A stretch of DNA of 64,000 nucleotides from Macrostomum lignano (GCA_002269645.1 NIVC01000261.1:246564-310563); one strand, 5' to 3'; shown: positions 16,554-63,819, counted from the first letter of the stretch. Notes: generated by a model from the letters alone, not told the origin. Numbers and translations are program-made.

Positions 16554-16573
16554 ATAGTTAGTTAGTTAGTTAG

Positions 16574-16657
<84 letters not shown>

Positions 16658-19930: not shown

Positions 19931-19934
19931 GCTC

Positions 19935-20108
19935 TCAGACGAAGATTCGTGATTCTCCTATCACCAGCAGTCTCAGCTTCTTTGCCTTCTTCTTGTCGTC
20001 CCATTCGCAGTCGTCGGCGAAGTCCTCAAACGTGCTGAGCCACATTCTCACGTTGGAGTCGCCGCTAAACTTTGGAGGCAATAAACTGGCTTGCTCTGAT
20101 TTGGCCAT
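19935..20108 (-). pseudogene. Gypsy gag N-terminal fragment (57 aa)
   Basis: MAKSEQASLLPPKFSGDSNVRMWLSTFEDFADDCEWDDKKKAKKLRLLVIGE; the ATG lies 6 nt after the PBS. Confidence 0.8.
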
Positions 20109-35911: not shown

Positions 35912-38159
<2,248 letters not shown>

Positions 38160-39965: not shown

Positions 39966-40964
39966 TTAAGTCGCTTTTTAAACACCGATTTTGGCGCTAT
40001 TTAAACAATGATTGTGAAGATATTTAAACATTGGTTTTTGCGATATTTAAACACAGAATTTGTACACCGATTTTTTTGGTATTTAAACACCAATTTAAAC
40101 ACTGATTCTGTCGCTATTTGTTTAATTTTTGCGCCAAATAAACACTAATTTTGGCCTTGGCCTATTTAAACCCTAGTTTTGGCACTTTCTAAGCACTGAT
40201 TTTTCCCTAGCTAAAACACTGATTTTGGCGTCATTTGAACATGTACATGTATAGTTTTTGCTTCAAATATTGACAAAAATAGTTTCGCTTTCCAGTCTCC
40301 GTAGCATATAAGAGTTTAGGCCCTGGTAACGAATCGACGAAGAGCCAGATGAAGGAAAAGAAACTCTTGGGCCGTGTCTTGTAAGGGGCCACCAGTTATG
40401 GTGGGAATTCCGTCAGCTGTTGTTCCAAGGCCATGTTAGCTTGGGGGCGCTGGAAGAATGGACAGGGGGAAGGCGTAGGAGACAGAAGGAGCTCAGGGAA
40501 GGCTTCTATTCTATCCAACCAAGAATTCTAAGATAATCCCAGCGAACTATACTAGTCCAAGTATTTAACTAATATCCCTTCTAAGCAGCTAAGCTTATCT
40601 GCAATTCTTCTTTACAGTCGATTTCAATACGATTGAGCGATTGAAGAGAAAACCCGATCTGGACTGGAAACCCAGTCGAGTATGTTAGCATTGGAACGCA
40701 TGCATGGGATGGAGGAAGCTGTATAGATGGGGAGAAAGAATGAATCAACAAAAATCCCTGATGGAGCTGCTGGGGATGCTGGGGATGCTAGAGCGATCCC
40801 ACGTGTCGCGGTTCCCACGGTTCTCTCTCTGCATCTGTCCGCCTCCTCCCCTCTCCATCCTGTCCAAGGACAGTTTGACGCAGAACTTGGAGTGAAAAAC
40901 AGTGTATTCACAAGGCTACACTTAGCTTATGGAATGTCACCTCAATTAACCCTTTCAAAACCCC

Positions 40965-41892
40965 ACCAAGGGGCTTTAGCACCAAGGGGCTTTAGCACCA
41001 AGGGGCTTTAGCACCAAGGGGCTTTAGCACCAAGGGGCTTTAGCACCAAGGGGCTTTAGCACCAAGGGGCTTTAGCACCAAGGGGCTTTAGCACCAAGGG
41101 GCTTTAGCACCAAGGGGCTTTAGCACCAAGGGGCTTTAGCACCAAGGGGCTTTAGCACCAAGGGGCTTTAGCACCAAGGGGCTTTAGCACCAAGGGGCTT
41201 TAGCACCAAGGGGCTTTAGCACCAAGGGGCTTTAGCACCAAGGGGCTTTAGCACCAAGGGGCTTTAGCACCAAGGGGCTTTAGCACCAAGGGGCTTTAGC
41301 ACCAAGGGGCTTTAGCACCAAGGGGCTTTAGCACCAAGGGGCTTTAGCACCAAGGGGCTTTAGCACCAAGGGGCTTTAGCACCAAGGGGCTTTAGCACCA
41401 AGGGGCTTTAGCACCAAGGGGCTTTAGCACCAAGGGGCTTTAGCACCAAGGGGCTTTAGCACCAAGGGGCTTTAGCACCAAGGGGCTTTAGCACCAAGGG
41501 GCTTTAGCACCAAGGGGCGCCAGCACCAAGGGGCTTTAGCACCAAGGGGCGCCAGCACCAAGGGGCTTTAGCACCAAGGGGCGCCAGCACCAAGGGGCGC
41601 CAGCACCAAGGGGCGCCAGCACCAAGGGGCGCCAGCACCAAGGGGCGCCAGCACCAAGGGGCGCCAGCACCAAGGGGCGCCAGCACCAAGGGGCGCCAGC
41701 ACCAAGGGGCGCCAGCACCAAGGGGCGCCAGCACCAAGGGGCGCCAGCACCAAGGGACGCCAGCACCAAGGGGCACCAGCACCAAGGGGCGCCAGCACCA
41801 AGGGGCGCCAGCACCAAGGGGCGCCAGCACCAAGGGGCGCCAGCACCAAGGGGCGCCAGCACCAAGGGGCGCCAGCACCAAGGGGCGCCAGC
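40965..41892. repeat. 16-bp minisatellite with two variant domains (ACCAAGGGGCTTTAGC then ACCAAGGGGCGCCAGC)
   Basis: 34 TTT units, an alternating zone at 41509-41572, then ~20 GCC units. Confidence 0.97.
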
Positions 41893-42253
41893 CAATGGGC
41901 GCCGGCACCAAGGACGCCAGAAATATAGCGCTGAGATTTTAGCACCAATTGCATTCCACTTTTCTAATCATTTCTGAACGTAACCTGTTTTTAATTATAA
42001 ACCAATTGTTTATTTGTCAAATTTAAACTCTGAGTTTCCTGCTAGATGTGAAGAAGTTTATTGATAGCTTCAAATAGTTTCTCACTGGCTGAGGCTCCAC
42101 TGACAGTTAAAAAAATTATAAAGATGACAGATAAGTGAAAATATGAGAAAGAGATAATATATCTTTATATCTTATCACCTCTCATAGAGAGCTGATGAGA
42201 GGGGAGAGGAGAGAGGAGAGCTGATGAGAAGAGAGAGGAGAGATGAGAGAGAG

Positions 42254-42775
42254 GGGAGCTGGAAGGAAACGAATTTGATAGAACCGGATAGAGAGAAGGG
42301 AGCTGGAAGGAAACGAACTTTGATAGAACCGGATAGAGAGAAGGGAGCTGGAAGGAAACGAATTTGATAGAACCGGATAGAGAGAAGGGAGCTGGAAGGA
42401 AACGAATTTGATAGAACCGGATAGAGAGAAGGGAGCTGGAAGGAAACGAAATTTGATAGAACCGGATAGAGAGAAGGGAGCTGGAAGGAAACGAACTTTG
42501 ATAGAACCGGATAGAGAGAAGGGAGCTGGAAGGAAACGAAATTTGATAGAACCGGATAGAGAGAAGGGAGCTGGAAGGAAACGAACTTTGATAGAACCGG
42601 ATAGAGAGAAGGGAGCTGGAAGGAAACGAAATTTGATAGAACCGGATAGAGAGAAGGGAGCTGGAAGGAAACGAACTTTGATCGAACCGGATAGAGAGAA
42701 GGGAGCTGGAAGGAAACGAATTTGATAGAACCGGATAGAGAGAAGGGAGCTGGAAGGAGACGAACTTTGATAGAG
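42254..42775. repeat. 44/45-bp purine-rich minisatellite, ~12 units
   Basis: GGGAGCTGGAAGGAAACGAA(A/C)TTTGATAGAACCGGATAGAGAGAA. Confidence 0.95.
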
Positions 42776-45483: not shown

Positions 45484-45993
45484 TCAGCGGCCCGGTTCCT
45501 GATGACCATCCAGGTGCAGCCAGTGCAGCACCGAGTGGCGGCAGTGCTTGGAACAGACGCAGTCAGGATGCCCATTGTGAATGAGGAAATCGCCCACGCA
45601 GAACGGGTCATTCGAATTAAAGACGTTTCGGCAGAGTCGAGTGCACAGGGAGTTCAGCTTGACCCTCTGCAGGTCTGTTGCGGTTGAGATAACGATTGGT
45701 TATTTATTAGTTGCTTAGTCATCAAGTGTGCGGCTTTTAGGGCCGCTGACCTTTTACCGCCTTGTGGGTTGGCCATCATAGGCGCTAAATGAACGAGAAG
45801 CTTACGATAAATTCATTCCTGGTTGCAACAAAAATAGTTTTTTTTGTTTTAAAACGCGATATATTCGGTAACAATGGACATTGTATAAGCTGAACATACC
45901 CGCTTCTCCGAAAACCCTCCGTTTAGCAGTAGTTTGGCTGCCTGTCACGGCTGCGATTGCGACAATAGCGAGAATTCCAGCTGCCTTTAGCAT
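45484..45993 (-). CDS. Small secreted Cys/His-rich peptide precursor, 103 aa, 3 exons (45993-45900, 45784-45758, 45674-45484)
   Basis: MLKAAGILAIVAIAAVTG signal-like N-terminus. Two GT-AG phase-1 introns (115 and 83 bp) join in frame to ...LCTRLCRNVFNSNDPFCVGDFLIHNGHPDCVCSKHCRHSVLHWLHLDGHQEPGR*. AATAAA ~300 bp downstream. Confidence 0.72.
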
Positions 45994-47620
45994 GATGAAG
46001 CTCCTGTAAAGCTAAGAGCGTGGATGGTTTAATTTTAAATAGACTTAGAAGAAGTAGAATTAGAAGTATAATAGCAGTCCTATCCGAGCAAGACTCATTT
46101 TTAACAACAGCTCTGATTTTTATACTCGAATTTTTGGGTACTTTTCTTTAAAAAATTCGTTTTTGTTAATCTGATTGGATCGCATTAGCCCGGGGTCGCA
46201 TCAAAGGGATTTTATCAAAGACACTAGTCCCAGAGAAGTACTGATTGGCTGGGCGAATCAATGACATGTTAATTTTTACGAGGAATTATTTTGTATATTT
46301 GTGTCAGATAAAAATGATTATTTACACATGTAGCTGCTTTTTGAGGCCCTCTTTGAGGACATGCACTTAAAGTACAATCGGCGGCGGCATATGAAAAATT
46401 AAACTTTGACATCGCATCACTGCATCGCACCGCCTAGAAATCAGTCGGGACCAGCTATGGAATCAGGATTTCTTCCAGAGGAGCGAACGAAGAATTTGCG
46501 AACTCATGAGAGATGACTAGCGAAATAGGGAGAAAAACAGATGAGCCCCCAGTCCCCCCCCATTCTTTAGCTCTTCTGTTTAGCTCAACATTCTGAACGA
46601 GCCTTGGAATCTGAGGAATTGTTATAGGTATTGATTTCAGCTTTACCATTCTGAGATGCTGAGATTTAGAGATTCTGACTAATCCTTCTCACCTAAAAGA
46701 AGAACAGCATTCTTTGCTTTCTGAAGAAAATTTCATATTTACAATTATTGCTCGAGAAATCTTCTTTTGCTACTCGTCAGTAGTCACTACCCTTAACTGT
46801 TTAAAAGCGCTTCAGCAAACACTGGAACGTTTTCGTCGTGTCCACAACGTATGTCCAAGTCGAAGTACTGTAGCAATGGCAGCTACATTCAGTTTACACG
46901 TCCTGACTGCTGATCATTTGAAACTTGCAGTGAACGCACAATATTGTGAAATACGAGCGCAAGTACGCGTGAATTTAAAGGTCAACGTTTTCATTATAAT
47001 TTTAAGCTTCTAATGCAGATAAGTGTGTGTAGGGAACGTGAAAACTAAAGTACTGAAAAATATTCGCGGAAGGGTTGCGCCCACCTTCGGTGATGTCGTC
47101 CGCCTCTTGTACTGTACAGCATTCCTTGTACTGTAGTAGTCCAGAATTATGCTACTCCCGAGTTGCGGTAGTTATCTGGATAGCTCGTCCATCATAATGT
47201 GAATATTTTGCTTTATTTTGCTCATAAATCATTCGTGCAATTTGCGGTTGTTCCACAGCAATTATGAATGCGTCAAGTAGGTGGGAGTTAGGAATATTAC
47301 AAGCTCGACTGTGCGATTAAATTCATTCGAGCTGCGTTGGTATGCGCTAGGAAAATTTATAAGTGTCGAAATTGTGCGAGCTAATCCCATTATGGGTTGG
47401 TAGGCAAGCATCGGAACGCAGATGCACTCCCGTCAGTCTCTCTCCTTTCGTTCGTACATTCAGACGCATGTGCAGAAGGGGATAGGGAAATCCTATATCC
47501 ATCATGTCCCTTGCAGCCACACACTCGTAGCATTGAACCCTGAACTCTCAGATATACATGCAAGCCGATCATATAAGCAGTTGCGCAAACAGCTAAAATA
47601 CCGGACAAAGAAAGCTGCAT

Positions 47621-50600
47621 ATGTCCACTGCTATTCTTGCTACCAAGCACGGAATTCAAGAGCCGAGTATGGAACAGCTGCAGCAGCAGCAGCAGCATGA
47701 TAGGACGCCAAAAGCGAACCAACTGCGCAGGTCTGCTATCGAGTTTCTCGGATACACGACAGCGCACGGCTTGGGAAGATTCGCCAGCCAGTCCAGTGCA
47801 ATCGGCAAGCTGATTTGGATCGGGTTCCTTCTGGGAACCTACTCAGGATTTGCCTATCACCTGTACACTCTCTTTGACAGGTTCGCTCAGGCGCCTGTTC
47901 TCACCACCATGACCATGTCCAGTCTGGGATTCCAGTTCCCGGATGTGTACATCTGCCCCGCCCAGCCAGTCACTATGAGCAGGGCCAGCAAAGAAATTGA
48001 ATCCGTTTACATTAGTTTCAACGCTAGAGACCATGTGAAACCTGAATTCAAAGCTAATTTCTTTCGATTTAATGGAACAAATGACGATTTATATGCGTTG
48101 AGCAAGCCGGCTAGGGCAATACTTTACGTTCTCAAGGCCACGGAGGCCGCTTTCATAGCAAAGTTTCAACTTCCCCAAGATGGTGAGTCATATAGTGCTC
48201 TTTTTCATATTTTGATACTTAAGTCATAAGTGTTTTCTTTGTATTAACTTTTAGAATAATAGCATCAGATTACATATGGTTGCTAAATTTTGCTAGTGGT
48301 GCTATGCTTTGTTACCGTACATGTATATTGATGTTCGGCCTAAAATATTCTCAGGAGAGTTGCAGGCACCATCTGGCGCAACGCCTTTGGCGAATTTTCC
48401 ACATTCCGCAACCAAAGCTGAGGCATCTCTGCACATTCCGCTGACTGTTGAGAACATGCAAGCGCTAATACTGTACGCAGACTGGATGAACAGCAAGCAG
48501 CCTTGACTGTCCAATTGTCGGACAAGTACAATCTCATGGATTTGATATGGATCAGATTTGATATCAGACGAATCGCACCACCCGCCACCTAACTTTCGTG
48601 AAGAAGATACAAATAATTTTTATTGCGCACAGATTCGTGGAGAGTTGGTTATGACAGTTAAAATATGATCGCTGAAAGGATTCAACGTTGATTGCATTGC
48701 AGAAGATGCACTCTTAGACTGTCGAACCAGCTTGTCTGGAGAGGAGTACGCTGGCAATAGAAGTTTCGCGGTGACATACGATCGAGCGCGAATCGATCTA
48801 CAACGCACTGACCGGTCGCTAAAGCCGTACACGACGACCAAGCCGTGCATTCGATGGAGCGAAGCTGCTCGGATGCTGAAAGCTCGAGGCGCAGCAAGCC
48901 TGGGCGACCGGCTGCTGATGCTTAATTACTCTGACAGCGAGTCCCGGTGCCGAGCTCCGGTCCGACTGCCGCTGTCTGAGTTTTTTCCGATTGGCAGCAG
49001 TGAGTGATAAAAAATTATGTTGACTCTGTGAATTTTGCGGATACTTTAACAATTTATCTTCTACTGTAATTGCTCTCGCTGACTCCAGAAGAAACCTTGT
49101 CGGGCAATAAATACGTCGAGTCTAGTCGATTCGTAGTTACGATAAAAATAAGTATTCCAAGCTCAACCGCAGTTAAAATTGCTCGAGCTGTGTTGCTATA
49201 TACTAGGAAAATTTATAATTGTTTATAGCTGTTCGAGCTAAGCCTATTATGGTCTGGTGTGGCAACCACCGAAACGCAGATGCACTTTAGCACTTTCCGT
49301 CTTTCCCTCTATTATCGTTTGTGCATTCAGGCGACTGTGGATGTAGAGGAAGGAGATACGGGATTTACTAATAGCCACATGGCTTCGAGCCTTTTATAGG
49401 TGCATGCCAGCAGTCATCGTTTACTCATCCTCTTGCAGAGAACTGTTGCCAAATATTTTTCTTACCTGTAGTTAATACTAAATCAGCTGATAATTTACCA
49501 TTAGAAATGCATTTAGCCTTGATGATTTGTTAATAAATCTAAACTTTGATTTCTTCTATTAACTTTTGAACACAATATCAGGATCGCTGCTACAACGAGT
49601 AGGTTGTTTTGCAAAAAACTCCAGCACTGTTGAAGAGAACTTCAACAAGACATGTCTCGTACGTGGCCGAATAACTACAGAACTGTGCGCCGACTGCTGC
49701 GATGAGCTCGACTTCACGCACATTGCCCTGCGGGACGGCGAGTGTCACTGCGGCACTTGGAACAATACACAGCAGGGGTTCTGCGACAAATTATCGATTA
49801 ACAGCGTCGCAAGGAAATGCGATTGCGATGTCAATGTTTTTTGTATAAGAGATACCGGTAAGTGAGGGAACAGAACTGCTGCAATTTTAAATGCGCGCAA
49901 ACAATGCGAGCTAGCTTTTTAATCAAGTCGTGCTTCATTTTCAGACTCAAAGCCGCTACGAATCAGCAACTCAAGCGTCCTGACGGCATTATCAAACGGG
50001 CCCTACTGCTTTTTCAAAGACGATTTTGGCAGGCTTGAGGCTGCTTTCTGCAACGTCCCACTCTGCCGTAGGTTTCTAAGGCTTCAATTTTGAACGCTGC
50101 TGTTGTAGAAGGACACCGCACACGCCTTCTGAACTTTTGATTTGCTGATGGGGCCAGTTTCAAACTGTTCTCGGTTCAAATTTGCGATTTGGTAGGACGG
50201 GTTTTCTGAGTGTTGATTCGATGTTAACTGGTCAAAAGCATTGAGTCAAGAGGCTTTAACCGTGAATAAGTGTACAGATGTTAGAAATAGAACTATTTAA
50301 CACAGGCATTAGGTAAGAAGTCCGCGCTAAATTTCTTTCAAGATTACTCTTCAGGAGGCGATCCGTTTCGTCTAAGTTTTTCGTCTAATTTTCGTCGAAA
50401 GTGGTCATTGATAGAGTTCATTTAGATTTCTTTAACGCCCGTAAAGATGCTGACCATACATTCGCTATTGAAACAATTTGAGCAGACGGAATTTTCGGAG
50501 CTTAATAAAAGGCCACGCGATTCGACGGTTGGCGTTCGGCCAGGATTCACGAGTTCCAAATAAATTACCGTGGGTAGAAGTCTAAGCAAGGACCATTAGA

Positions 50601-53600
50601 AGTTACTGTTGTACTTGTATTCAGGCTGTAACACAACTGCTACAACGGTAACTTCTAGTGGCCCTTGAGTCTAAGCTCCAGACTATATATACCTACATGT
50701 TTATACATGCGAATGCATAAGCTACGAGTATAGTCTAGTAATGTACGAACAACGCACTTAATCTACTTAATGACTTGTATGACGACGTCGACTATTAACA
50801 TCGGCTGGCAAACGTCGCAATCTCCGGTTTTGACAGTGTAGTATGTATGAGTAGCGCGTCTAACCGCTGATGCAGACAGCGATTCCTTAATAAACTTAAT
50901 AAAATTTCAGTAACGTTGAGTACTACAACTTCATTTTATAGGCATGAATTCCGGCTATGACTGCATTTTTGGTACAACTGACGATGCAGCTCGGCAGCGA
51001 CAGCAGGCCGTCTACACCGGCTACAGGAATGTGGCGGCCTCGGGAGAGCCCTGCTTGGCCTGGAACCAGATCGTGGAACGAAACAAGCAGAGAAAGCAAA
51101 AAATAGATCCAGTTGGTAAAGTGCATGTACTATGTAGACGTAAAATAATAAAACGAGTTTTACGTGTAAAACCAATACGGTGGTGGTTACTAGTAGAACG
51201 GTGAAGTATTTATTCGTAAGTATTATATTCAATTAAAAAAATTAACGAGATTTTTCGAGGAAAGAAAGTTTTTCGGGAAAATTTATGATAATATTTAAAG
51301 CGCTTTAACAACAAAAACCTGGGCTAAGTTAGCAGTATGGTCTAATAGTTGTCTTGGACAATAAAAAACTAATTGACGAGAAAAAATCATTTATTAGAAT
51401 TTTAGATTATAAGTAGCTATACTTTATAAGTTACACGTATACTTTATATACAAACGATTATACGGGGAAGCAAGTTTCGCTACTACTCGTACAAGTTTAG
51501 AAACATCAGACAAAAACAATTTGTGACTGAATGAGAAACTCTTCTCTAGTAGCAGTAACAACAAAACACAATAACACAATAACGATATAAAAAAAACTGT
51601 GTAGTTGTTGAGTGAAAGTATTTTATTTATTTATATAATCCAGTTGTCCTCCAGCGCTTTTAATATTTAAACAAAATGTCTTTATATTTTAAACTGTCAC
51701 ATTTCAGCCAACTATGACTATAAAATGCGGATTCATTTGGAAACGCCCGACTATGACCGGCTTGAAGGTGCTGACAATTTTTGCAGGCCTGCTCAAATTA
51801 TCCGGGAGTTTGGCTTTTCAGACAGGGTTTATTAGTAAGCTTTGATTGCAGCTATACGCTTAATAGTGCTGCCAATTCAGTAATTATTTAAGTGCCAAAA
51901 CACTTGCAGCCCTAAGTTCTCATATCGAACATTTCAGTCGGAACCCAGATTTGATATCAGACGACGAGGCTCCCTCCTGCGTTTCTGACACCTTCGGAAA
52001 ATCCAACTTGGTAAATTTGGCATTGACCAAGTGCGACATTCCCGCCTGCTGTGAGTTTAGCATTTGCCAGTCAAATAGTCCTAAAAAATATTGTGCCAGT
52101 TTCTGCCTGCATCTGTCTCACTTCTGTCTGAATGTCTGTCTCTCGATTGGCGCCCGCCCCTGTCCTTGGGCCTGTCCCTCTCATCTTAGGCCTGTGATTT
52201 CACAACGCCGAAAACTCTACGAGTATATACGAGACCCTCTAGCTCGTACAAGACCAAATTTGACAACGCCAAATATTTGCATGGTCCTTGTTTTATTAAG
52301 TTTTCTACGATGTGAACTTTCCGTCATATGAATTTTCGGACTTTTAAAGGGTCTTGCATTTGGAGTTTTCAGTGTTGTGAAATTTCGGTCTTATAAAAGG
52401 AACCCATCAGTTCTTTAGTTTGATTTTTTAATAGGAACGTCCCCCTCGCCCCTCCCCTTCTGCTTAGGCCACAATACAATATACTACATGTATTTAGCTT
52501 TAAGATAAGTAGAAGAAATGTCACAGCCAATAAGTGCTACAGTTTTCTAGCTCTTATTGATGTCTTGCAGACACTAAAGTTCCCACCGTGACTGCTGCGA
52601 TCCGGGATGGCATCGGCAGCCACCTGCTGGCCCTGCAGTTCAGCAGCGACCTGAGCTTCACCCTGGTCGAGTGCTCCTTCGGTGGCCAGAGCTGCACTAA
52701 AGACGACTTCCTGAGCGTGTCTCACCCGCAGCTGGGCATGTGTCACCACTTTATGAAGCAGCGGTTCACCCAGAACATGTCCAGCTCGCAGTTGGCGGAC
52801 AGTCAGCTGTCAATCAAATATTTCACGGACTCGACAGACTCGAATGGTGGAACAATACCAGAATTGGACAAGCTGAACCGCATCGTGCACAGGTCCGTCA
52901 GCAATGATGAAAGAAGAATCGCTTTTAAAGTAAGTCCTACAAACAGGGAATGTTTTGAAACTGTTTGTACCATGCCGTTGCGTTGTGTTCTTCTCTCAAG
53001 TTTTCATGTCCTGATTATCATGTCTTAGTTCCTAGTTCTCAACCCCGCGTGTTCAATCTCATTTCTCATTGTTGGTAGAAGCTTTTAATTAATTACCACT
53101 TTATTAGTTCAAACATCTCCTGAATTTTGCAGGCAGTCATAGTCCCAGAAGGCAGCTACCCATGGCCGTCAAAGGGTGTCGATGTTGCCACAGCTCAAAG
53201 CTTGGATATTCAGTTGAGTTTAAAAAAAATTAAGAAGCTATCCACTGCATCGAGGCCCTGTGTTGAGAACACGGAGCCTGTAACTTACAGAATGCTGTCT
53301 TGGAAGCAGGCTAAAACCACGAGTTCTAATGAGTAAGCCTGGAAATATTACTTGGACATAAGTATGATCCTAAATTGCATTATCGTGACTTTCTATTTCA
53401 GGGAAAATATACGTTTACACTTCGTTAAGGCAGCCTCGGAATGGTGGCAAAAAATTGCTGTTCTGCGAGCACAACTTGAAAAACAAAACGCGTTGAGGTG
53501 CGTGGCATACTGTACTCAACATTTTAACCTGTCCAACAGTTTAATCCTACGATATGAAATCTTTTACATTTGACTTTGTAGACCCCTGCAAGCAATGGAT

Positions 53601-56600
53601 TGGCGCTACAATATCCCAAGCAAAGAAGACTACACAAACAAATTTACTGTGCAACATTTCGCTAAGGCATGTAACTGCTTGCCATCATTTCTGCCAATTG
53701 AAGTTGAGTTATTCTCGAACTATACCTTCTGCTTTGACACCAATGACACGGAGACTGTGTCAAGGCTACGGGAATCATGCCACAGAGAGCAGTTATCGAA
53801 GCTGCTGCAGTACCAGTTCGAGGCGGCTAAGAAAGCCTTGTCGCCGTGCGAGGAAACCGACTACGACATGCGGCTTATCTCCTACGCTTGGCCGAATCTA
53901 AGTGGCGCCAAGTCGATGGAGATTCTAAAGAAGCTGGCGCACAATTTTGGCTTAGGAACAGAGTACAGTCGTCTTAGAGGAATAAGCAGCATCTACAGCA
54001 CTTACTGGCGCTCTCTGGTCATGTTGGAAAGCAATCTGACCGAGAGCAACTTGCACGATAGAATTAATTTTGAAAACGAGCTAAAATTTCTTCGAGACCG
54101 ACTGGCTCAACTGACGGTTAAAGGATTGACGTCGTATGGTCAGGAAATTTCGGAAGAGGAGGCCTACCCCGCGAAAAATCTTCTGGCCGATATAGGAGGT
54201 AACTGCGTTTTTTGACTGTATGCTTTTGAATTACTAAAGCCAATCAAGTCTAAGAACCTTACACACCGCGGCAACAGCCACTGCCACGAGAATTGCACCT
54301 AACCCACCCCATTCGCTCAGTCACTGGATGAGGAAGAACTTTTTTAATTTTTTAATTGCACACTAGTTCTCATCTCCTTCTCTCTTACTAATAGTAGGCT
54401 CGTATGTTAATTTAGGATTTTTCTTTATTGATGATTGCTTTTCTGCGTTAAGACTTCGTGTTGAGTCGAAGTGGCCTTTCTTTATTGAGAGGCAGGCCGG
54501 CGAAGCTGGAGGGATGAAAAGCCTCCTCTGCATGTAAAAAGTCTGTTGTCCAGCGCTAGCTTTTCGAAAATGGCTTTGAAACTTGACTCCGCTTGCGAGC
54601 AACACTGACAGTCTCCATGGCGTGTTCTCATGAGTATCTTCTGGGTGAACGGATCTCTGCGTCCATTTACATGTATGTCAAAATTCTTTCGGGCTCGATC
54701 GCCAGTGATTCGAATGCCTCGGCGTTGATGGTATCAAACGTTTCCTTGTCGTCTGCGAAATAGTTGTCGAAGCGGAGCCGATGTGGAGCTCGTCAGCGTG
54801 TGGAATATCGCAGCCTTGCACATACTCGATGTTCAAGAGACGACATAGCCCAGCGCCCAATTCTCGGCGATGTGTGCAAAGCTGTAGAGATGTCACAGCC
54901 AGAAGAGACGACTCAGTGGCTGAAAATCGTGCCTAACGGCCATGAAGGAAGTTTGATTTTTGAGCAATTTGATTTGGCGGCTGACAGTGTCCTCGAAACA
55001 AATATTTCGGGATACCTCTCCTATGTCACTACGCGGCGATTGAGCTCTTTGAGGCATCCTTTCTTAGAGTTAACTCTTTTGATAGGCTATAGGGCTTGCA
55101 CTATATATTGCACTATTGGGACTTCAGCTTTGAGATAATCGAAAGCTGGAGAGCACTCATCGGTCCAGTCAAAGTTGATGTTAGATTTTTGCAGTTAATT
55201 AAGAGGAACAGTCTTTTGAGCGAAGTTCGGAATTAGTCTCCTAAAGCAGTTGACCAGTCCCAAAAGCTGGCGAGCTCAGATTTGTTTGTCGGGGCAGAAA
55301 CGTGTCTGACTTTTTTATACCAGCCGTTCATCTTAGCTAGATTCCGAATTAGAGATCGATCGGGCTTCACCAAGTGACTGCGACGCCATTTTAGTGTTTC
55401 TTTCTGTTTTACATTTGCGTTGAGTTGAAGGCCTTTCTGAATTGAGCATACCCTCTTAGGAAATTCGAAGCTTATTCCTAGTTAAATTCCTAGTCTAACT
55501 GCGAATATTCAAAGTTAATTAAACTACGAATGAGAGAACGATTGTGTCCTAGTAAAAGTGACTGTTTGAATTAATAGCAATTTATCAAAACTATACTTCT
55601 ATTGTTTATTCTTACTATTTTTATGGCAATTTATAAGAAAAATAATTCATTATCTTACTTGAATCTTACTCAATTGCTACATTTATAACTGCCTATTTCG
55701 ATCAATACTACTGAAAAAATAAACTGTGTGCTACTAAACGTAGTAAATAAACACGAGTATGACTCCTAAATGTTGAACTTTGATTCATGCTCACCTGTTT
55801 TAGGGCGTCACAATTTTTCACATTTTTCGATTTATTATCGTATATAGCTATCATTTCTCGCTCCAGAAAGTATAGTATTTCGATAGCTAAGTTTGTCTTC
55901 TGTTTGTCTTCAACTACTTATACGCGCTCGTACTTAATACTTCAACTACCTAACCTGAAGTATTCTATAATAAGCCCGAATTTTCATAAACCCGAAATAT
56001 CACAACTTCGAAAGTTCTAGCAACGTCCAACACTATTTTGGTTTTCGAAGTGATGCTGTTTCGGGTTTATGATAGAAAGCGCTTTTCGAAATTGTGATTT
56101 TTTGTGATTAAAGAGAAAGTCAAAGGGTCTGTCAACTTAAGATCATAAAGCGGAGCCCGAGTAACCTATGTACACAAATGATAGGTCATTCTGCTCACAG
56201 TGACACTAGGAAGATGGGTTTGGCAAAAAAGCGACAGACATTTGACTCGGGAGAACAAACAAGGGGATAATTATTATGTCAACTTAAGCTCATAAAGCAC
56301 CCTTATTATCCCCTTGCTTGTTCTCCCAAGTCCAATTTTGTCGCTTTTACTCGGGCTCCGCTTTAAGAGCTTAAGTTGACAGGCCCTTTCGATCATTCAA
56401 GTTTTCAAGTGCAACTTTTATCGCAATGCTGGACAAGATGAGTGGCCACTTTACTGATTGAGGTTTTTCCAGTCCATCAGTCTACCGATCAAACAGGTAT
56501 TGGAAATCCCGAATACTTTCTGAGAATTTAGTTTTTTGATCATGTATTCATGACAGCGCAAGAACCCCCACAAAAAGTCCCATCTGTCCCTGCTGCATGA

Positions 56601-57337
56601 TCAATACGATCTAGTCCTAGCAGCGTCCAGCTTTATACATCGGAGATGGACAGCTATAGCTATACGCTCGTACTAAGGCACTAGTTGGCAGGTACGTGCA
56701 GGAGCCGCAATTCTAGTCAAAAAAACTGATTTCGAAAGTGCTTCTTCGTTAAGCCTGTTCAGCTTGTGATGGCGGATTAGCATAAATCCCGGGATTTGTT
56801 GTTTTCTACCCTTTCAAATTCTCCCTACTAGTCTCTCGCTCTCCTCTCTTAGCTATTGACACCAATGCAAGGCAATTTGATTCATTTCTGGACTCTGAGG
56901 ACCGAAAAGTTTCCGATCAAAAAAGCTTAAGAAGGCTTCATGATTCGCTTGCTTTATTTTCTATGGTCCAGTGGATTTTATGGCTGTGGCTGCCACTGCA
57001 GTGAATGGGGATCCTCGACGAGAGACTTTCATTATTTCCTGGGGGTCTTTGACAGCCTCAACTTCCACTAGATATGGGTCCCTCATTGGATTTGTGAAGG
57101 GCAGTGCCCCCCATTTTATGAAGGTTTGCACAGTTTAATAAATGCATGTACACCTATTATATAAACTTTCTTTTTTCAGGAGCTCTAGGCCTATGGAGCG
57201 GAATATTTGTTCTGACAATCTGCGAGCTGCTTGAGTTCTTTTACTACATCAGCATCGGCTTGGCGCTGAGTCTGCGACATCGACGCGATTCACTCCGAAG
57301 GGACAGTGTGGCCAGGGAAATTGAGACCCATGCTTAA
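47621..57337 (+). CDS. DEG/ENaC (amiloride-sensitive channel family) subunit with a kringle-WSC-kringle insert, 12 exons, 1,033 aa
   Basis: Exons 47621-48182, 48703-48999, 49582-49857, 49945-50067, 50942-51115, 51708-51834, 51938-52050, 52571-52929, 53133-53332, 53402-53497, 53582-54198, 57180-57337. All phases match; total 3102 nt. Motifs: TTAHG, TM1 IWIGFLL, FPDVYIC, ECSFGGQSC...F...GMC, CNCLP, PCEETDY...AWP, YPAKNLLADIGG|ALGLWSG...LTICE. The exon-2 acceptor is the least certain. Confidence 0.9.
48703..50067 (+). other. Kringle-like domain 1 (exons 2 and 4), interrupted by the WSC exon
   Basis: DC...SGEEYAG...KPCIRW...SRCRAP | GPYCF...AFCNVPLC: the six-Cys kringle pattern. Confidence 0.75.
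49582..49857 (+). other. WSC-like domain on a single phase 1-1 exon (92 codons)
   Basis: VGCF...ITTELCADCC...FTHIALRDGECHCG...C...C...VF matches WSC YxGCY...MTxExCxxxC...YxGLxxGxECxCG. Confidence 0.75.
50942..52050 (+). other. Kringle domain 2 (exons 5-7)
   Basis: YDC...VYTGYRNVAASGEPCLAW...DNFCR...RNPD...APSC...KCDIPAC. Confidence 0.85.
54600..55380 (-). pseudogene. Highly degenerate Gypsy pol fragment (RT connection/RNase H) in the last intron of the channel gene
   Basis: Frameshifted motifs LGLVNCFRRLIPNFAQK, FDWTDECSPAFDYLK, DASKSSIAA, SRTLSAAKSN, SPRIGRWAM, NIEYVQGCDIPHADEL. Confidence 0.75.
56122..56389. mobile_element. MITE / foldback element with 43-bp TIRs, an inner inverted repeat and a central TIR fragment
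   Basis: 56122-56164 versus 56347-56389 (40/43); 56227-56271 versus 56305-56348; central TGTCAACTTAAGCTCATAAAGC at 56277-56298. Confidence 0.85.
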
Positions 57338-57509
57338 GGACTTCACGTGAAAGCGCAAGACATGGTAAAAATTTTGCTTTAGCTAAGTCGGTTTTTTGCT
57401 TAAAATGCATTAGTGAATTCGTATTTTTCTGCTTCTTTGGACCAACTGGACAGTATATCTCACCTTCAAGACTTCTTACAGTACTATTATTTTTATTGTT
57501 ATTATAGCT

Positions 57510-57897
57510 TTTGTCATGCTGTCTCGGCCTGGGGACATCCAAACTCAGCCAGCCCCATTCCGCAATGCGTTTTTTGGCTCGAGCTAGTCGAGTTTTGCCA
57601 TAGACGTGCTTCTTGGGGCCATGCTATCTCAGCCTGGGACATGCAATCTCAGCCAATATAGATTTCAATTGCAAACAGATCTCAATGCTATCATTTCTGT
57701 AACGTGACATGAAATGGCAACAAACAGCAATGAATGAACGCAGCAAGAAAAGTCAGTAAGAATCTGAAAAGTGGCTGAGATTGCATGGCCTTAAGAAGCA
57801 TGTCTATGGTAAAACTTGACTGGCTTACGTAAAAAATCGCACTGTTGAGATGGGCTGGCTGAGTTTGGATGTCTCTGGGCTGGGATGGCATGACAAA
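57510..57897. mobile_element. Foldback element with nested inverted repeats just downstream of the channel stop codon
   Basis: 57510-57560 versus 57850-57897 (~80% by eye, with a perfect GACATCCAAACTCAGCCAGCCC core); perfect 16-bp inner pair 57640-57655 versus 57772-57787. Confidence 0.7.
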
Positions 57898-57898
57898 T

Positions 57899-57952
57899 AC
57901 TATATTATTATTATTATTATTATTACTAGTATTATTATCAGTATTATTATTA
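57899..57952. repeat. (TAT)n microsatellite
   Basis: Direct reading. Confidence 0.9.
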
Positions 57953-60197: not shown

Positions 60198-63100
60198 TCA
60201 GTCTGGTCCGCTAGTAGCTCTCTCATTCCTCAGCTTCATCACCAAATTAACCGGCTGCTGGCGATAACCAACTGCTACCAGATCGTTGATCTCTTCGTGC
60301 TGCCCAAGACTCTTGCAGCAGCAGCAGCAGCAGCGGTCAAAACAGCGTGACAAAGGTGTCGGCCAGCGGCTCTGATAAGCCCCGTAGATTACCGGATTCA
60401 CAGCGCTGGTAGACATGCCGAAAAAGAACACTCCGTTTGAAATCAGTTCCACCGCGTCGTTGTACCGACCTCCGCTAAGCCGGTTAGCGCACGCAAATAT
60501 GTACAGGCCCCAGTAGGGCAGCCAGAGCAGTAGGAATGTCAAAATGATGACGGAGAACATTCGAAAGCTGCGCAGTTTTGCGCGAAGTAAAAATGCCTGA
60601 CGATAGCTGGCGATGAAGTTGCCGGCTTGGTTTAATTGCATCTCGTAGCTCGGCGGCGACTGGGTCTGAAGTTGAGACCGCTGCTGCTGCTGCTGCCGCT
60701 GTTTTGGATGATGATGATTATTTAAGAAGTCGGTGCCGAGTGTCGGCGAGCTGGGTTCGGGCTGCAGCGGCTGCTGCTGCTGTTGCTGTTGGTAACCGTT
60801 CAGACTTTCAGCATCCGTGGCTGAAGTGACGCAGAAGAAAATTAGACTCTCAAGGTGAGATTCTTGGGTTTGACCCGTTTGAGATAGCAATTAGAGTCGG
60901 TCTCACAAAGACTCTCAGGGTGAGATTCTATGGTATGCGATAGCAACTAGAGTCGGTCTCACAAAGAGTCTCAGGGTGAGATTCTAGGGTCTGAGATAGC
61001 AATTAGAGTGTTATTAAACTCTCAGGGTGAGATTCTAGGGTTGGAGATCGGTCAGTCTATAGGGACTGGCTAAATTCTTCCTAATGCTGGCTAGTTGCAG
61101 TCGGAAGATTAAATTTAAAATTTGGAGAAAAATTGCTTTGATAATCAACCTCAGAAAAAATCTCTCATTTGAGGGCTTGATTTATCAAAAATATGAAAAA
61201 ACGGCTTGGAAATGAATTCGATGGTGCTATAGCTGCACAATGAGATTTGACTCATTGAAATTTACATACTCCATTGTTTCCGAGAGTAGATTTTATCACG
61301 AATTTGCTGAAGGCAGCATGCGAGCGTACAAAATGGACATTTGCATTTGCAAACTGGACTGCTTGTTGTAATATTGGAATAAAACACTCTCCTGTCAGGC
61401 ACAGGAGGGTGTTCTACAGGAGGGTGTTACACAGGAGGGTGTTACACAGGAGGGTGTTACACAAAAGGGTGTTGTTACACAGCGATAGGCTATAGTGATT
61501 ATAGTTAAAGAGTCAATGTAAACTAGCTTTCACTAAAAGTGCAAAGAAAGCTTTGAAGTTGTACAATCTATTCAAAAAGTCGTATAGAGGTTATAACCTA
61601 CATTGCAGAGTCAAAATACATGTAATTCGATCCCCATAGCAGAATCCATCCACTTAATGAAAGGATTAGCTAGACTCGAATTACACATAGGCAACAAGTC
61701 CATAGTTTCAATGCGAACGGAAGTGAGCTTATAAGATAAAGCTTATAATTATTATATTATTATTATTTTGGTGAAGAGCGGTTGAAACTGCATATTTAAA
61801 GATTACAAGTTCCTCTCTGGTTAAGTTCATTATATATACGCGCTCGTAGGTATATTTCCACCATTCCGCTATCTCTCATCTCTGCCTCTCTCATCTCTGC
61901 CTCTCTCATCCATCCTCTCTCATCTCTGCCTCTCTCATCTCTGCCTCTCTCATCCATCCTCTCTCATCTCTGCCTCTCTCATCTCTGCCTCTCTCATCCA
62001 TCCTCTCTCATCTCTGCCTCTCTCATCTCTGCCTCTCTCATCCATCCTCTCTCATCTCTGCCTCTCTCATCTCTGCCTCTCTCATCCATCCTCTCTCATC
62101 TCTGCCTCTCTCATCTCTGCCTCTCTCATCCATCCTCTCTCATCTCTGCCTCTCTCATCTCTCCCTCTCTCATCCATCCTCTCTCATCTCTGCCTCTCTC
62201 ATCTCTGCCTCTCTCATCTCTGCCTCTCTCATCCATCCTCTCTCATCTCTGCCTCTCTCATCTCTGCCTCTCTCATCCATCCTCTCTCATCTCTGCCTCT
62301 CTCATCTCTGCCTCTCTCATCCATCCTCTCTCATCTCTGCCTCTCTCATCTCTCCCTCTCTCATCCATCCTCTCTCATCTCTGCCTCTCTCATCTCTGCC
62401 TCTCTCATCCATCCTCTCTCATCTCTGCCTCTCTCATCTCTGCCTCTCTCATCCATCCTCTCTCATCTCTGCCTCTCTCATCTCTCCTCTCTCATCCATC
62501 CTCTCTCATCTCTGCCTCTCTCATCTCTGCCTCTCTCATCTCCCCTCCTCATCTCTGCCTCTCTCATCCAATCCTCTCTCATCTCTGCCTTTCATCTCTG
62601 CCTCTCTCATCCATCCTCTCTCATCTCTGCCTCTCTCATCTCTGCCTCTCCATCTCTGCCTCTCTCATCCATCCTCTCTCATCTCTGCCTCTCTCATCTC
62701 TGCCTCTCTCATCCATCCTCTCTCATCTCTGCCTCTCTCATCTCTGCCTCTCTCATCCATCCTCTCTCATCTCTGCCTCTCTCATCTCTGCCTCTCTCAT
62801 CCATCCTCTCTCATCTCTGCCTCTCTCATCTCTGCCTCTCTCATCCATCCTCTCTCATCTCTGCCTCTCTCATCTCTCCTCTCTCATCCATCCTCTCTCA
62901 TCTCTGCCTCTCTCATCTCTGCCTCTCTCATCTCCGCCTCTCTCATCTCTGCCTCTCTCATCCAATCCTCTCTCATCTCTGCCTTTCATCTCTGCCTCTC
63001 TCATCCATCCTCTCTCATCTCTGCCTCTCTCATCTCTGCCTCTCTCATCTCTGCCTCTCTCATCCATCCTCTCTCATCTCTGCCTCTCTCATCTCTGCCT

Positions 63101-63819
63101 CTCTCATCTCCGCCTCTCTCATCTCTGCCTCTCTCATCCAATCCTCTCTCATCTCTGCCTTTCATCTCTGCCTCTCTCATCCATCCTCTCTCATCTCTGC
63201 CTCTCTCATCTCTGCCTCTCTCATCTCTGCCTCTCTCATCTCTGCCTCTCTCATCTCTGCCTCTCTCATCTCTGCCTCTCTCATCCATCCTCTCTCATCT
63301 CTGCCTCTCTCATCTCTGCCTCTCTCATCCATCCTCTCTCATCTCTGCCTCTCTCATCTCTCCTCTCTCATCTCTGCCTCTCTCATCTCTGCCTCTCTCA
63401 TCTGCCCCTCTCTGCCCCTCTCATCTCTGCCTCTCTCATATCTGCCCCTCTCATATCTGCTCCTCTGCCTTATATTCTAACTCGTTCTCAGTCTCTGTAT
63501 CTCTGATTGAGTCAGGAGTATAAGTACAAATGCCATTAATTAATGCTATTAACAATCGATCAATATTTTCCATAGCTGTTTACTCACCGCCCAGTTCGCG
63601 AGATTTCCCCGAGATCCTGCTAATAATGAGTCCGTAAGCTGTGCTCAAGCAGCACAGTGGGCCAAGAAACAGACTGGCAATGTTAAACAGCATGTAGGCC
63701 AGCACCAGCTTGTCCATGTGAGCTGTCAGGTGGTCTGTGCTAGTGGGCTGCATATCCAGCGAGACGCATTGGTAGAAATCTTCTCTCCATGGGCCTCGGG
63801 CCAGTCCAAAGAAGAATAG
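60198..63819 (-). CDS. Rhodopsin-family neuropeptide GPCR, GnRH/corazonin/AKH receptor type; last two exons (63819-63588, 60820-60198), 5' part beyond window
   Basis: ECL2 LARGPWREDFYQCV; TM5 AYMLF...FLGPL...AYGLI; RAKLRSFRM; TM6 FLLLWLPYW; TM7 FFFGMSTSAVNPVIYG. A phase-1 GT-AG intron joins ELG|ATD. Confidence 0.88.
60838..61048. repeat. 51-56-bp degenerate tandem repeat (~4 units) with a TCTCAGGGTGAGA palindromic core
   Basis: Direct reading; abuts the GPCR last-exon acceptor. Confidence 0.85.
61400..61480. repeat. 15-bp repeat ACAGGAGGGTGTTAC, ~5 units
   Basis: Direct reading. Confidence 0.9.
61872..63470. repeat. Pyrimidine-rich satellite, 15+15+14-bp units forming a 44-bp higher-order repeat, in the GPCR intron
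   Basis: A=CTCTCTCATCTCTGC, B=CTCTCTCATCCATC, mostly A-A-B. Confidence 0.97.

What the first reader, a model, noticed from the sequence alone, without database searches (positions are those of the whole stretch)
47621..57337. DEG/ENaC channel with a 370-aa kringle-WSC-kringle module inserted in its finger domain
Seen: twelve phase-consistent exons give one 1,033-aa ORF. Between the FPDVYIC strand after TM1 and the ECSFGGQSC motif, six exons (1,110 nt, about aa 188-557) encode two six-Cys kringles and a WSC-like domain. Known: this interval is the variable finger region of DEG/ENaC/ASIC channels. It holds the peptide pocket in FaNaC, the protease-released inhibitory tracts in ENaC and the extra Cys-rich domain in nematode degenerins. 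Kringle plus WSC is otherwise known from Kremen receptors. I know of no characterised channel with this architecture. Inference: an ion channel fused to its own extracellular recognition or tether module (protein, glycan or matrix gating).
Basis: partly seen in the sequence, partly recalled or inferred. Interest (0 to 1): 0.92.

Follow-up and report, generated by a model that had tools for sequence, protein, structure and literature searches.

The report
Flatworm sodium channel carrying kringle/WSC module
A Macrostomum lignano (free-living flatworm) DEG/ENaC-type ion-channel gene really does carry two kringle-like domains and a WSC-like domain inside its extracellular "finger", an undescribed architecture shared by several paralogues, whose function is still untested.

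Summary
The 12 GT-AG exons give one 1,033-aa ORF, identical to GenBank PAA86857.1 (BOX15_Mlig006398g1, Macrostomum lignano). That model comes from an RNA-seq-based annotation, so the insert exons are part of the annotated transcript.

The ASC domain is solid at 139 bits. The 370-aa insert lies between the FPDVYIC and ECSFGG strands, which is the finger region by alignment to FaNaC and ASIC5.

Kringle and WSC fall below Pfam thresholds in this copy. Profile methods support them:
- Kringle 2 against genuine kringles: hhalign probability 97.7%.
- Exon 2 + exon 4 against the same set: 97.3%, spanning all six cysteines.
- The paralogue profile's best solved-structure match is Kremen-1.
- WSC passes Pfam's cutoff in three paralogues.

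At least five paralogue groups share the insert, and all are from M. lignano. No paper describes it.

This copy looks derived. It has lost one canonical WSC cysteine, and the G-x-S selectivity-filter serine is a phenylalanine (G-I-F).

A ligand- or matrix-binding role acting on gating is plausible but remains inference. I class it as a new variant of a known kind, with moderately high interest.

The parts
45502..45672 (+). Possible alternative 5' coding exon (57 aa, ATG..CAG|gt). It would splice in frame to an internal acceptor at 47648.
   Evidence: tblastn of the N-terminus of UniProt A0A1I8IQF7 (P0001) gives 100% identity over 57 aa. The donor gt at 45673 and the acceptor ..ccaag|CAC at 47648 were read directly. 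It comes from an older gene prediction only.
47621..48182 (+). Exon 1. It encodes the cytoplasmic N-terminus, the HG motif (H49-G50, 47765-47770), TM1 (about aa 61-86), FPDVYIC (47936-47956) and the first part of the finger.
   Evidence: H49 and G50 invariant across paralogues. One search aligns it to FaNaC and ASIC5 TM1 plus 'FP.V.IC'.
48703..48999 (+). Exon 2 (297 nt, phase 1-1). N-terminal two-thirds of kringle 1 (Cys1-3: C194, C236, C270).
   Evidence: hhalign of this exon alone matches kringle profile positions 1-68. It holds 3 Cys. These Cys are invariant in the paralogues.
49582..49857 (+). Exon 3 (276 nt, phase 1-1). Degenerate WSC-like domain nested in kringle 1. It has 11 Cys, and canonical Cys7 is replaced by Ser.
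   Evidence: No Pfam hit in this copy. hhalign against 22 WSC repeats gives probability 69.5%, E 4e-5. Paralogues reach Pfam WSC scores up to 43 bits. The insert profile matches the Kremen-1 and yeast Wsc1 WSC domains.
49945..50067 (+). Exon 4 (123 nt, phase 1-1). C-terminal third of kringle 1 (GPYCFF...FCNVPLC; Cys4-6: C400, C414, C419).
   Evidence: hhalign of this exon alone matches kringle positions 62-89 at probability 92%. Exon 2+4 together match positions 1-89 at probability 95-97%. It also aligns to the C-terminal end of the Kremen-1 and plasminogen kringles.
50942..52050 (+). Exons 5-7 (50942-51115, 51708-51834, 51938-52050). Kringle 2 with enlarged loops (C427, C457, C503, C534, C552, C557).
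   Evidence: hhalign gives probability 97.7%, E 1.6e-12 with the paralogue profile, and 95.2% with the window sequence alone. The profile search of PDB sequences returns mostly kringles, 58 of the top 60. Cys-fixed column shuffles never approach the observed score.
52571..54198 (+). Exons 8-11 (52571-52929, 53133-53332, 53402-53497, 53582-54198). End of the finger, ECSFGGQSC, and the rest of the DEG/ENaC ectodomain.
   Evidence: Pfam ASC. Alignments to FaNaC 7YVB and ASIC5.
57180..57337 (+). Exon 12. TM2 and the cytoplasmic C-terminus. The selectivity-filter position reads G989-I990-F991, with the Phe codon TTT at 57206-57208.
   Evidence: One search aligns this position to GIS of FaNaC and GAS of ASIC5. 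One search shows the sister copy has TCT = Ser. One search shows the hydropathy peak at aa 976-1013.

Best explanation
This is a real, transcribed Macrostomum lignano gene for a DEG/ENaC-family subunit. Its extracellular finger domain carries a 370-aa disulfide-rich adhesion-type module.

Shown:
- The module is built from phase-1 symmetric exons.
- It consists of a divergent kringle (K1) interrupted between Cys3 and Cys4 by a WSC-like domain, followed by a second divergent kringle (K2).
- The arrangement is a domain inside a domain inside a domain.
- It is shared by at least five paralogue groups, so it predates their radiation.

Inferred mechanism:
- The finger is where DEG/ENaC channels receive their gating inputs.
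- WSC and kringle domains are binding modules for glycans and proteins.
- So the module most likely acts as a built-in receptor or anchor. It would bind an extracellular partner (matrix, glycocalyx, or a secreted or cell-surface protein), and the resulting conformational or mechanical load would be passed through the finger to the gate.

About this copy:
- It is the most derived family member, with a degenerate WSC.
- It has G-I-F instead of G-x-S in the pore.
- It may therefore conduct atypically, or serve as a modulatory subunit in heteromers.
For: Gene model:
- The exon model and ORF rebuild cleanly.
- The translation is identical to PAA86857.1.
- GenBank's Mlig_3_7 annotation is derived from RNA-seq (StringTie/TACO) and de novo transcripts, with ORFs called by TransDecoder (PMC5730564).

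Channel identity and insertion site:
- ASC scores 139 bits.
- The insertion point maps between 'FP.V.IC' and 'C.F....C' of FaNaC 7YVB and ASIC5.

Conservation of the insert:
- All 6+6 kringle Cys and most WSC Cys are invariant in the paralogues.
- The exon boundaries flanking the WSC exon are the same, with phase-1 junctions, in two other paralogue genes.

WSC evidence:
- Pfam WSC passes its cutoff in P0008 (41.1 bits), P0011 (39.1) and P0013 (43.0).
- The insert profile's best match among PDB sequences is Kremen-1, E 3.9e-9.

Kringle evidence:
- hhalign of K1 (exon 2+4) and K2 against 30 genuine kringles gives probabilities 97.3% and 97.7%.
- The scores are 63 and 69, against 11 +/- 2.5 for Cys-fixed column shuffles.
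- Exon 2 matches kringle positions 1-68 and exon 4 matches positions 62-89.

Background for the mechanism:
- The FaNaC finger takes part in ligand recognition (title of bioRxiv 10.1101/2023.02.01.526556).
- MEC-4 sits in membrane-matrix complexes (abstract of 10.1101/2022.02.11.479800).
- Yeast Wsc sensors sense mechanical force at the cell surface (abstract of PMC9024836).
Against: - No functional, expression or binding data exist.
- Both AlphaFold2 runs were poor (mean pLDDT 53 and 39.5). The nested fold and the disulfide pairing are therefore sequence-level inferences only.
- Kringle never reaches Pfam's cutoff in any paralogue (at most 22.7 bits).
- WSC is undetectable by Pfam in this copy.
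- The canonical filter Ser is Phe in this copy.
- Recent-copy comparisons give no power to show purifying selection on the insert. Window versus sister copy: 5 non-synonymous and 1 synonymous change in the insert. P0011 versus P0155: 5 and 4.
- An isoform that skips some or all insert exons is possible in frame and was not excluded.
Confidence: 0.6

Rival explanations
1. Annotation artefact. On this reading the kringle/WSC exons belong to a separate gene nested in a large intron of the channel gene, and the single ORF is a read-through or chimeric model.
For: Exon 1 to exon 8 is phase-compatible. The insert alone found no homologues in the word-indexed search. Older predictions (P0001, P0007, P0010) lack some insert exons.
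Against: - Exon 2 has no start codon or signal-peptide-like start, and there is no stop anywhere in the insert.
- The same colinear arrangement occurs at four other loci fetched from other contigs: a sister copy and three paralogue-group genes. At least one of them has much shorter introns.
- The GenBank models are transcript-derived.
- The Cys skeleton is conserved at 27-46% identity.
Confidence: 0.04
2. This copy is a decaying or non-conducting duplicate in a neopolyploid genome. On this reading the architecture is real in the family, but this locus no longer encodes a working channel.
For: - F991 replaces the G-x-S Ser. The sister copy and the paralogues have Ser.
- The WSC has lost canonical Cys7 and gained two other Cys, and Pfam no longer detects it.
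- In the insert, the window and sister copy differ by 5 non-synonymous changes and 1 synonymous change.
- The genome has extensive redundancy at 95% identity or more (PMC5730564).
Against: - The 1,033-aa ORF is intact across 12 exons.
- All 12 kringle Cys, the HG motif and the rest of TM2 are intact.
- G-I-F is present in at least three further gene models (P0163-P0165), so it is not a one-off error.
- The locus is covered by a transcript-derived model.
- The substitution counts are far too small for a dN/dS conclusion.
Confidence: 0.2
3. The insert is an autoinhibitory or maturation module, like the ENaC GRIP domain. On this reading it is removed or rearranged by proteolysis to activate the channel, and is not a binding or tether module.
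For: It has the same topological location as the ENaC protease-released tracts (finger), from my own knowledge of the ENaC structure. One paralogue has R-P-R-R at the K1-N/WSC junction (P0006/P0007).
Against: - No furin-type site is conserved across the paralogues at either boundary (alignment).
- The module is made of disulfide-locked binding-type folds rather than short inhibitory peptides.
- Nothing here tests proteolysis.
Confidence: 0.1

Closest known systems
FaNaC and other DEG/ENaC channels (closest solved structure: FMRFamide-gated Na+ channel, PDB 7YVB; then 8ON7, ASIC5 9MKY, ENaC 6WTH)
   Same: Pfam ASC domain, HG motif, TM1 and TM2, 'FP.V.IC' and 'C.F....C' strands, and the TM2 motif 'DIGG.LGLW.GI.VLT..E'. 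The finger is the variable, ligand-receiving region.
   Different: A 370-aa kringle/WSC module sits in the finger. This copy has G-I-F instead of G-I-S / G-A-S. Similarity is low (E 2e-13 to FaNaC). Three other M. lignano DEG/ENaCs near the FaNaC clade were tested by others and did not respond to the peptides tried, but they are different genes (PMC9234716).
Kremen-1/2 (Kringle-WSC-CUB Dickkopf co-receptors; PDB 5FWW/5FWS)
   Same: It is the best solved-structure match of the insert profile (E 3.9e-9). The WSC segment aligns at E 1e-5, and both kringle halves align. It is one of the few animal proteins combining kringle and WSC (PMC5014086 abstract).
   Different: - Kremen is linear (kringle, then WSC, then CUB) on a single-pass receptor.
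- Here the WSC is nested between Cys3 and Cys4 of kringle 1.
- A second kringle follows, and there is no CUB.
- The whole module sits inside a channel ectodomain.
ENaC GRIP domain and nematode degenerin extra cysteine-rich domain (finger insertions)
   Same: They are lineage-specific regulatory insertions in the finger of a DEG/ENaC subunit (my own knowledge of the ENaC and MEC-4 literature; not tested here).
   Different: Those insertions are not recognisable mobile modules. No conserved furin sites are seen here. This insert is larger and is made of exon-shuffled adhesion-type domains.
Yeast Wsc1-type cell-wall stress sensors and polycystin-1 (WSC on mechanosensory membrane proteins)
   Same: A WSC domain is displayed on a membrane protein implicated in sensing surface mechanics. 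The insert profile hits the yeast Wsc1 structure 7PZ2 at E 3.2e-7 (PMC9024836 abstract).
   Different: The membrane proteins are unrelated, and there are no kringles. The polycystin-1 comparison is from memory only.
Invertebrate multi-kringle proteins (for example Darwinula stevensoni CAG0891250.1)
   Same: They share the N-terminal kringle signature 'C[KR].T..G.EY.G..N' and the C-terminal 'GP[WY]CF...C.[IV]P.C'. hhalign gives probabilities around 97%.
   Different: Those are tandem canonical kringles scoring 240-300 Pfam bits. Here the loops are greatly expanded, and one kringle hosts another domain.

Membership tests
DEG/ENaC (Pfam ASC, PF00858) | Significant match to the ASC profile above the curated cutoff | tested here: met
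   139 bits against a cutoff of 23.6, in three stretches split by the insert.
DEG/ENaC (Pfam ASC, PF00858) | Two transmembrane helices flanking a large ectodomain, with an HG motif before TM1 | tested here: met
   H49-G50 is invariant in the paralogues. The TM1 region aligns to FaNaC and ASIC5 TM1. TM2 gives a hydropathy peak at aa 976-1013.
DEG/ENaC (Pfam ASC, PF00858) | G/S-x-S selectivity-filter motif in TM2 | tested here: not met
   The window copy reads G989-I990-F991 (TTT at 57206-57208). It aligns to GIS in FaNaC and GAS in ASIC5. The sister copy has TCT = Ser, and the paralogues have GIS.
DEG/ENaC (Pfam ASC, PF00858) | Trimeric, amiloride-sensitive cation channel activity | not testable with these tools
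   Needs expression and electrophysiology.
Kringle (PF00051) | Match to the Pfam Kringle profile above the curated cutoff | tested here: not met
   14.2 bits against a cutoff of 34.3 in the window protein. Scores are 10.6-22.7 bits in the related M. lignano proteins that gave a hit, and P0011 gave none. Only the 'YTG..N...G..C..W' stretch of K2 is hit.
Kringle (PF00051) | Six-cysteine skeleton with kringle signature motifs, aligned over the whole domain | tested here: met
   hhalign against 30 genuine kringles gives K1 (exon 2+4) probability 97.3%, E 2e-11, and K2 probability 97.7%, E 2e-12. Both span Cys1-Cys6. Window-only sequences give 95.3% and 95.2%. Cys-fixed shuffles score at most 22, against observed 63 and 69. 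UniProt names a K2-containing paralogue fragment 'Kringle domain-containing protein'.
Kringle (PF00051) | Kringle fold with 1-6, 2-4, 3-5 disulfides | tested here: inconclusive
   The AlphaFold2 models had mean pLDDT 53 and 39.5. The Foldseek search returned nothing meaningful.
WSC (PF01822) | Match to the Pfam WSC profile above the curated cutoff | tested here: not met
   No hit in the window protein. The cutoff is met in paralogues P0008 (41.1 bits), P0011 (39.1) and P0013 (43.0). P0003, P0004, P0006 and P0007 are borderline at 24.6-26.4 against 27.8.
WSC (PF01822) | Homology to structurally defined WSC domains | tested here: met
   The paralogue profile matches the Kremen-1 WSC at domain E 1e-5 and yeast Wsc1 (7PZ2) at E 3e-7. 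Window exon 3 alone against 22 WSC repeats gives probability 69.5%, E 4e-5.
WSC (PF01822) | Eight conserved cysteines | tested here: not met
   Against the Kremen-1 alignment, the paralogues keep all 8 plus 2 extra. The window copy has Ser at Cys7 and two new Cys, 11 in total.
Kremen family | Linear Kringle-WSC-CUB ectodomain on a single-pass receptor | tested here: not met
   No CUB hit. The WSC lies between Cys3 and Cys4 of kringle 1. The host protein is a two-TM channel subunit.

The most novel reading that the evidence does not exclude
Macrostomum has evolved a family of self-anchored DEG/ENaC channels. On this reading the nested kringle/WSC module binds extracellular matrix, glycocalyx or a specific secreted or cell-surface ligand, and transmits force or binding directly to the finger to gate the pore. 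This would be a one-polypeptide version of the tether model of mechanotransduction, or a new class of macromolecule-gated DEG/ENaC.
Probability: 0.25. Interest if true: 0.85.

Novelty: new variant of a known kind. Interest (0 to 1): 0.62.

Why it matters
The DEG/ENaC finger is where peptides, protons, proteases and probably extracellular tethers act. In all characterised channels, however, the sensor is either part of the finger itself or a separate protein.

A channel with a recognisable matrix/ligand-binding cassette spliced into the finger would be a natural experiment on how external binding or force is coupled to gating. Macrostomum lignano is transgenic-tractable, so the idea can be tested.

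The WSC-inside-kringle-inside-ASC nesting, built from phase-1 symmetric exons, is also a clean example of repeated exon shuffling into an existing domain.

The sequences are already in public databases as 'hypothetical' or 'WSC domain-containing' proteins. Four full-text literature searches found no description of them.

Tried and rejected
(1) The insert alone in the word-indexed 5.8-billion-protein search gave no hits. The full-length query was needed.

(2) The single-sequence search of the insert against PDB sequences gave nothing.

(3) AlphaFold2 on the whole insert (5-row alignment) gave mean pLDDT 53. On K1[WSC] of paralogue P0008 it gave 39.5. No structural conclusion is drawn.

(4) The profile of K1 (exon 2+4) against PDB sequences with HMMER hit only the C-terminal third of a kringle (E 0.2). 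hhalign of K1 against K2 matched only the C-terminal motif. A profile of genuine kringles was needed.

(5) Synonymous and non-synonymous counts between near-identical copies were too small to interpret. Window versus L002 gave 7 non-synonymous and 4 synonymous changes. P0011 versus P0155 gave 8 and 6.

(6) Looking for the architecture outside M. lignano:
- In the profile search of 1.84 billion representatives, full-insert matches came only from M. lignano. The other top hits that I scanned with Pfam were multi-WSC or multi-kringle proteins.
- The third word-indexed search with a full-length profile again returned only M. lignano.
- This does not exclude species that have no protein annotation in these databases.

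(7) Literature searches for ENaC/degenerin with kringle or WSC, and for the Mlig gene IDs, found nothing relevant.

(8) The nested-gene artefact explanation was considered and rejected (see rival explanations).
Full report

I rebuilt the gene from the raw window. There are twelve exons: 47621-48182, 48703-48999, 49582-49857, 49945-50067, 50942-51115, 51708-51834, 51938-52050, 52571-52929, 53133-53332, 53402-53497, 53582-54198 and 57180-57337. All introns are GT..AG, and they join into one 3,102-nt ORF of 1,033 aa.

Exons 2-7 sum to 1,110 nt (aa 188-557). Exons 2, 3, 4 and 5 are each phase 1-1, and exons 6+7 together are phase 1-1.

The translation is identical, residue for residue, to GenBank PAA86857.1 / UniProt A0A267GN93. 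[quoted passage not shown]

The GenBank annotation of assembly Mlig_3_7 was produced from a genome-guided transcriptome (StringTie/TACO on RNA-seq plus mapped de novo transcripts), with ORFs called by TransDecoder (PMC5730564). The splice chain that includes the insert exons is therefore transcript-derived, not an ab initio guess. I could not inspect reads myself.

**2. What are the parts?**

Pfam finds ASC (PF00858) at 139 bits, split around the insert.

The closest solved structures are FaNaC (7YVB, E 2e-13), FaNaC1, ASIC5 and ENaC. In those alignments 'FQFPDVYIC' pairs with 'YPSVTIC', and 'LVECSFGGQSCTKDDF' pairs with 'LIHCRFNREECTTENF' (FaNaC) and 'LLDCEFFGKPCSPKDF' (ASIC5). The insertion point therefore lies in the helical finger between these strands, about 30 residues before the C-x-F strand. 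That the finger is the family's variable, input-receiving domain is established knowledge.

Pfam Kringle scores 14.2 bits against a cutoff of 34.3, and WSC gives no hit. A sequence search of the PDB with the insert also finds nothing.

The picture changes once relatives are used. A full-length search found paralogues at 27-46% identity, all from M. lignano. In all of them the insert is present in frame, with every kringle cysteine and most WSC cysteines invariant.

Evidence for the WSC domain:
- Pfam WSC passes its cutoff in P0008 (41.1 bits), P0011 (39.1) and P0013 (43.0).
- It is just below the cutoff in four other paralogues.
- A profile of five inserts searched against PDB sequences puts Kremen-1 first (E 3.9e-9; WSC segment domain E 1e-5).
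- The same search finds yeast Wsc1 (7PZ2) at E 3e-7, followed by prothrombin, HGF, tPA and ROR1 kringles.

**3. The topology is nested, not linear.**

Exon 2 holds only three cysteines, and exon 4 holds three more. In the Kremen alignment, the C-terminal kringle motif (GPYCFF...C.VP.C) comes after the WSC.

I built a profile of 30 genuine kringles from multi-kringle proteins that score 240-300 Pfam bits (Darwinula stevensoni). I then compared the window's domains with it using hhalign:
- Paralogue alignment of exon 2 + exon 4 (WSC removed): matches the whole kringle, Cys1 to Cys6, probability 97.3%, E 2.3e-11.
- Paralogue alignment of exons 5-7 (K2): probability 97.7%, E 1.6e-12.
- Control: shuffling all non-cysteine columns while keeping the cysteines fixed drops the scores from 63 and 69 to 11 +/- 2.5, with a maximum of 22 in 100 shuffles each. 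The match is therefore not just a cysteine pattern.

With the window's own sequences:
- Exon 2 alone aligns to kringle positions 1-68.
- Exon 4 alone aligns to positions 62-89.
- Exon 2+4 aligns to positions 1-89 (probability 95.3%).
- K2 aligns to positions 3-89 (probability 95.2%).
- Exon 3 does not resemble a kringle (probability 0.3%).
- Exon 3 aligns to a 22-repeat WSC profile (probability 69.5%, E 4e-5).

The architecture is therefore ASC-finger[ K1-N | WSC | K1-C | K2 ]: a WSC inside a kringle inside a channel ectodomain.

In two other paralogue genes the exon boundaries fall at the homologous positions. In P0011 the intron before the WSC exon is phase 1. In P0004 the intron after it is phase 1 under one of the two junction solutions. 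The nesting therefore predates the paralogue radiation. It looks like classical phase-1 exon shuffling into an intron of the kringle; the phase-1 rule for extracellular modules is established knowledge.

**4. How far does the family extend?**

A profile search of 1.84 billion representative proteins found full-insert matches only in M. lignano:
- Mlig006398, Mlig013355 and Mlig031843 (this gene and its near-identical copies).
- Mlig006056 g1-g3.
- Mlig007204 and Mlig028168.
- Mlig034226.
- Several UniProt-only fragments.

The other top hits that I scanned with Pfam are multi-WSC or multi-kringle proteins. A second, full-length profile search again returned only M. lignano.

UniProt auto-names the paralogues 'WSC domain-containing protein', and one K2-containing fragment 'Kringle domain-containing protein'.

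Four full-text searches found no description of a DEG/ENaC with kringle or WSC, and no mention of these gene IDs. The three M. lignano DEG/ENaCs tested in oocytes by Dandamudi et al. are different genes (PMC9234716).

Species that lack annotated proteins in these databases could not be searched.

**5. Peculiarities of this copy.**

The WSC is degenerate:
- Relative to the Kremen-1 alignment, the paralogues keep all eight canonical cysteines plus two extra.
- The window copy has Ser at Cys7 and two new cysteines, 11 in total.

The pore motif is altered:
- The G/S-x-S filter reads G989-I990-F991 (TTT at 57206-57208).
- FaNaC has GIS, ASIC5 has GAS, and the paralogues have GIS.
- A sister copy on another contig (L002, NIVC01000649.1) has TCT = Ser at that codon. 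It also carries an A8-to-A7 frameshift in exon 9.
- G-I-F recurs in three other gene models, so it is not a lone error.

The two copies are 100% identical over window 47000-50185 and about 98% identical beyond. This suggests gene conversion or an assembly mosaic in this redundant neopolyploid assembly.

Substitution counts between recent copies are too small to measure selection.

**6. How it most likely works.**

Shown: a transcribed DEG/ENaC subunit with a conserved, disulfide-rich, N-glycosylation-site-bearing module in the finger.

Inferred:
- WSC and kringle domains are binding modules. WSC binds glycans or cell wall in fungal sensors, and protein in Kremen. Kringles bind proteins.
- The finger transmits ligand and modulator inputs to the gate.
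- The module most probably binds an extracellular partner (matrix, glycocalyx, or a secreted or cell-surface protein) and thereby gates or tunes the channel.

By inspection, the canonical lysine-binding 'NPD.D' loop is not recognisable in either kringle. In K1 this is exactly where the WSC is inserted. Lysine-type ligand binding is therefore unlikely.

Alternatives are an ENaC-GRIP-like autoinhibitory module (no conserved furin sites) and, for this copy, a modulatory or decaying subunit because of G-I-F.

I put the architecture at about 0.9 and the binding-module-gates-the-channel mechanism at about 0.35.

**7. Verdict.**

It is a member of DEG/ENaC by Pfam and by motifs, except for the filter serine in this copy. 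It is not a Kremen-family member.

I class it as a new variant of a known kind. The sequences are already in the databases but are undescribed. The finding is interesting to channel biologists and as a case of nested exon shuffling, and it is testable in a transgenic-tractable animal.

Noticed in passing
window 45502-45672 (+), joining 47648: An upstream ORF segment (ATG..CAG|gt) encodes the 57-aa N-terminus of an older UniProt model of this gene (A0A1I8IQF7). It is in frame with an internal acceptor (ccaag|CAC) nine codons into exon 1.
   Followed up: partly
window 57206-57208 (exon 12): The selectivity-filter serine of the G-x-S motif is Phe (TTT) in this copy. The sister copy on contig NIVC01000649.1 has TCT (Ser) but carries an A8-to-A7 frameshift in exon 9 (window equivalent about 53218-53225).
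   Followed up: yes
window 47000-50185 versus L002 9380-12565: The two genomic copies of the gene are 100% identical for 3.2 kb (promoter to intron 4) and about 98% identical thereafter. This could be gene conversion or an assembly mosaic.
   Followed up: no
window 1-12400 and 22500-33900: A segment of about 12 kb is duplicated at 97-100% identity, with a spacing of about 22.5-22.7 kb. After the 18-nt minisatellite (10830-12114) of the first copy, the spacing drops to 21.5 kb. One ORF in the second copy, at 33116-33907, has a sub-threshold fibronectin-III hit (21.2 bits against a cutoff of 25).
   Followed up: partly
window 18511-20004 (-): A 497-aa ORF with RT-RNaseH and integrase domains sits in a GC-rich (64%) block. 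It is a fragment of an LTR retrotransposon pol gene.
   Followed up: partly
window 36792-38153 (-): A 453-aa ORF carries LAG1 DNA-binding and beta-trefoil domains. It is an exon of a CSL / Suppressor-of-Hairless (RBPJ) type Notch-pathway transcription factor.
   Followed up: partly
window 60198-60890 (-): An ORF matches the C-terminal part of a rhodopsin-family GPCR (7tm_1, 32.7 bits).
   Followed up: no
window 10927-12114, 13991-14565, 16359-16691, 36519-36770, 38842-40007, 40964-41886, 42246-42774, 61872-63460: There is an unusually dense set of long minisatellites (periods 4-45 nt, up to 1.6 kb each) in the region around the gene.
   Followed up: no
window 47327-47428 and 49183-49286; 57480-57634 / 57773-57927: A dispersed repeat of about 100 nt (80% identity) lies just upstream of the start codon and again in intron 2. 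A 155-nt inverted repeat (76% complementary, MITE-like) lies just 3' of the stop codon.
   Followed up: no
protein P0094 (ENA-derived, 1,084 aa; not in the window): A database protein has seven kringles fused to a rhodopsin-type GPCR. It is another case of kringles displayed on a membrane receptor. Its species is unknown.
   Followed up: no
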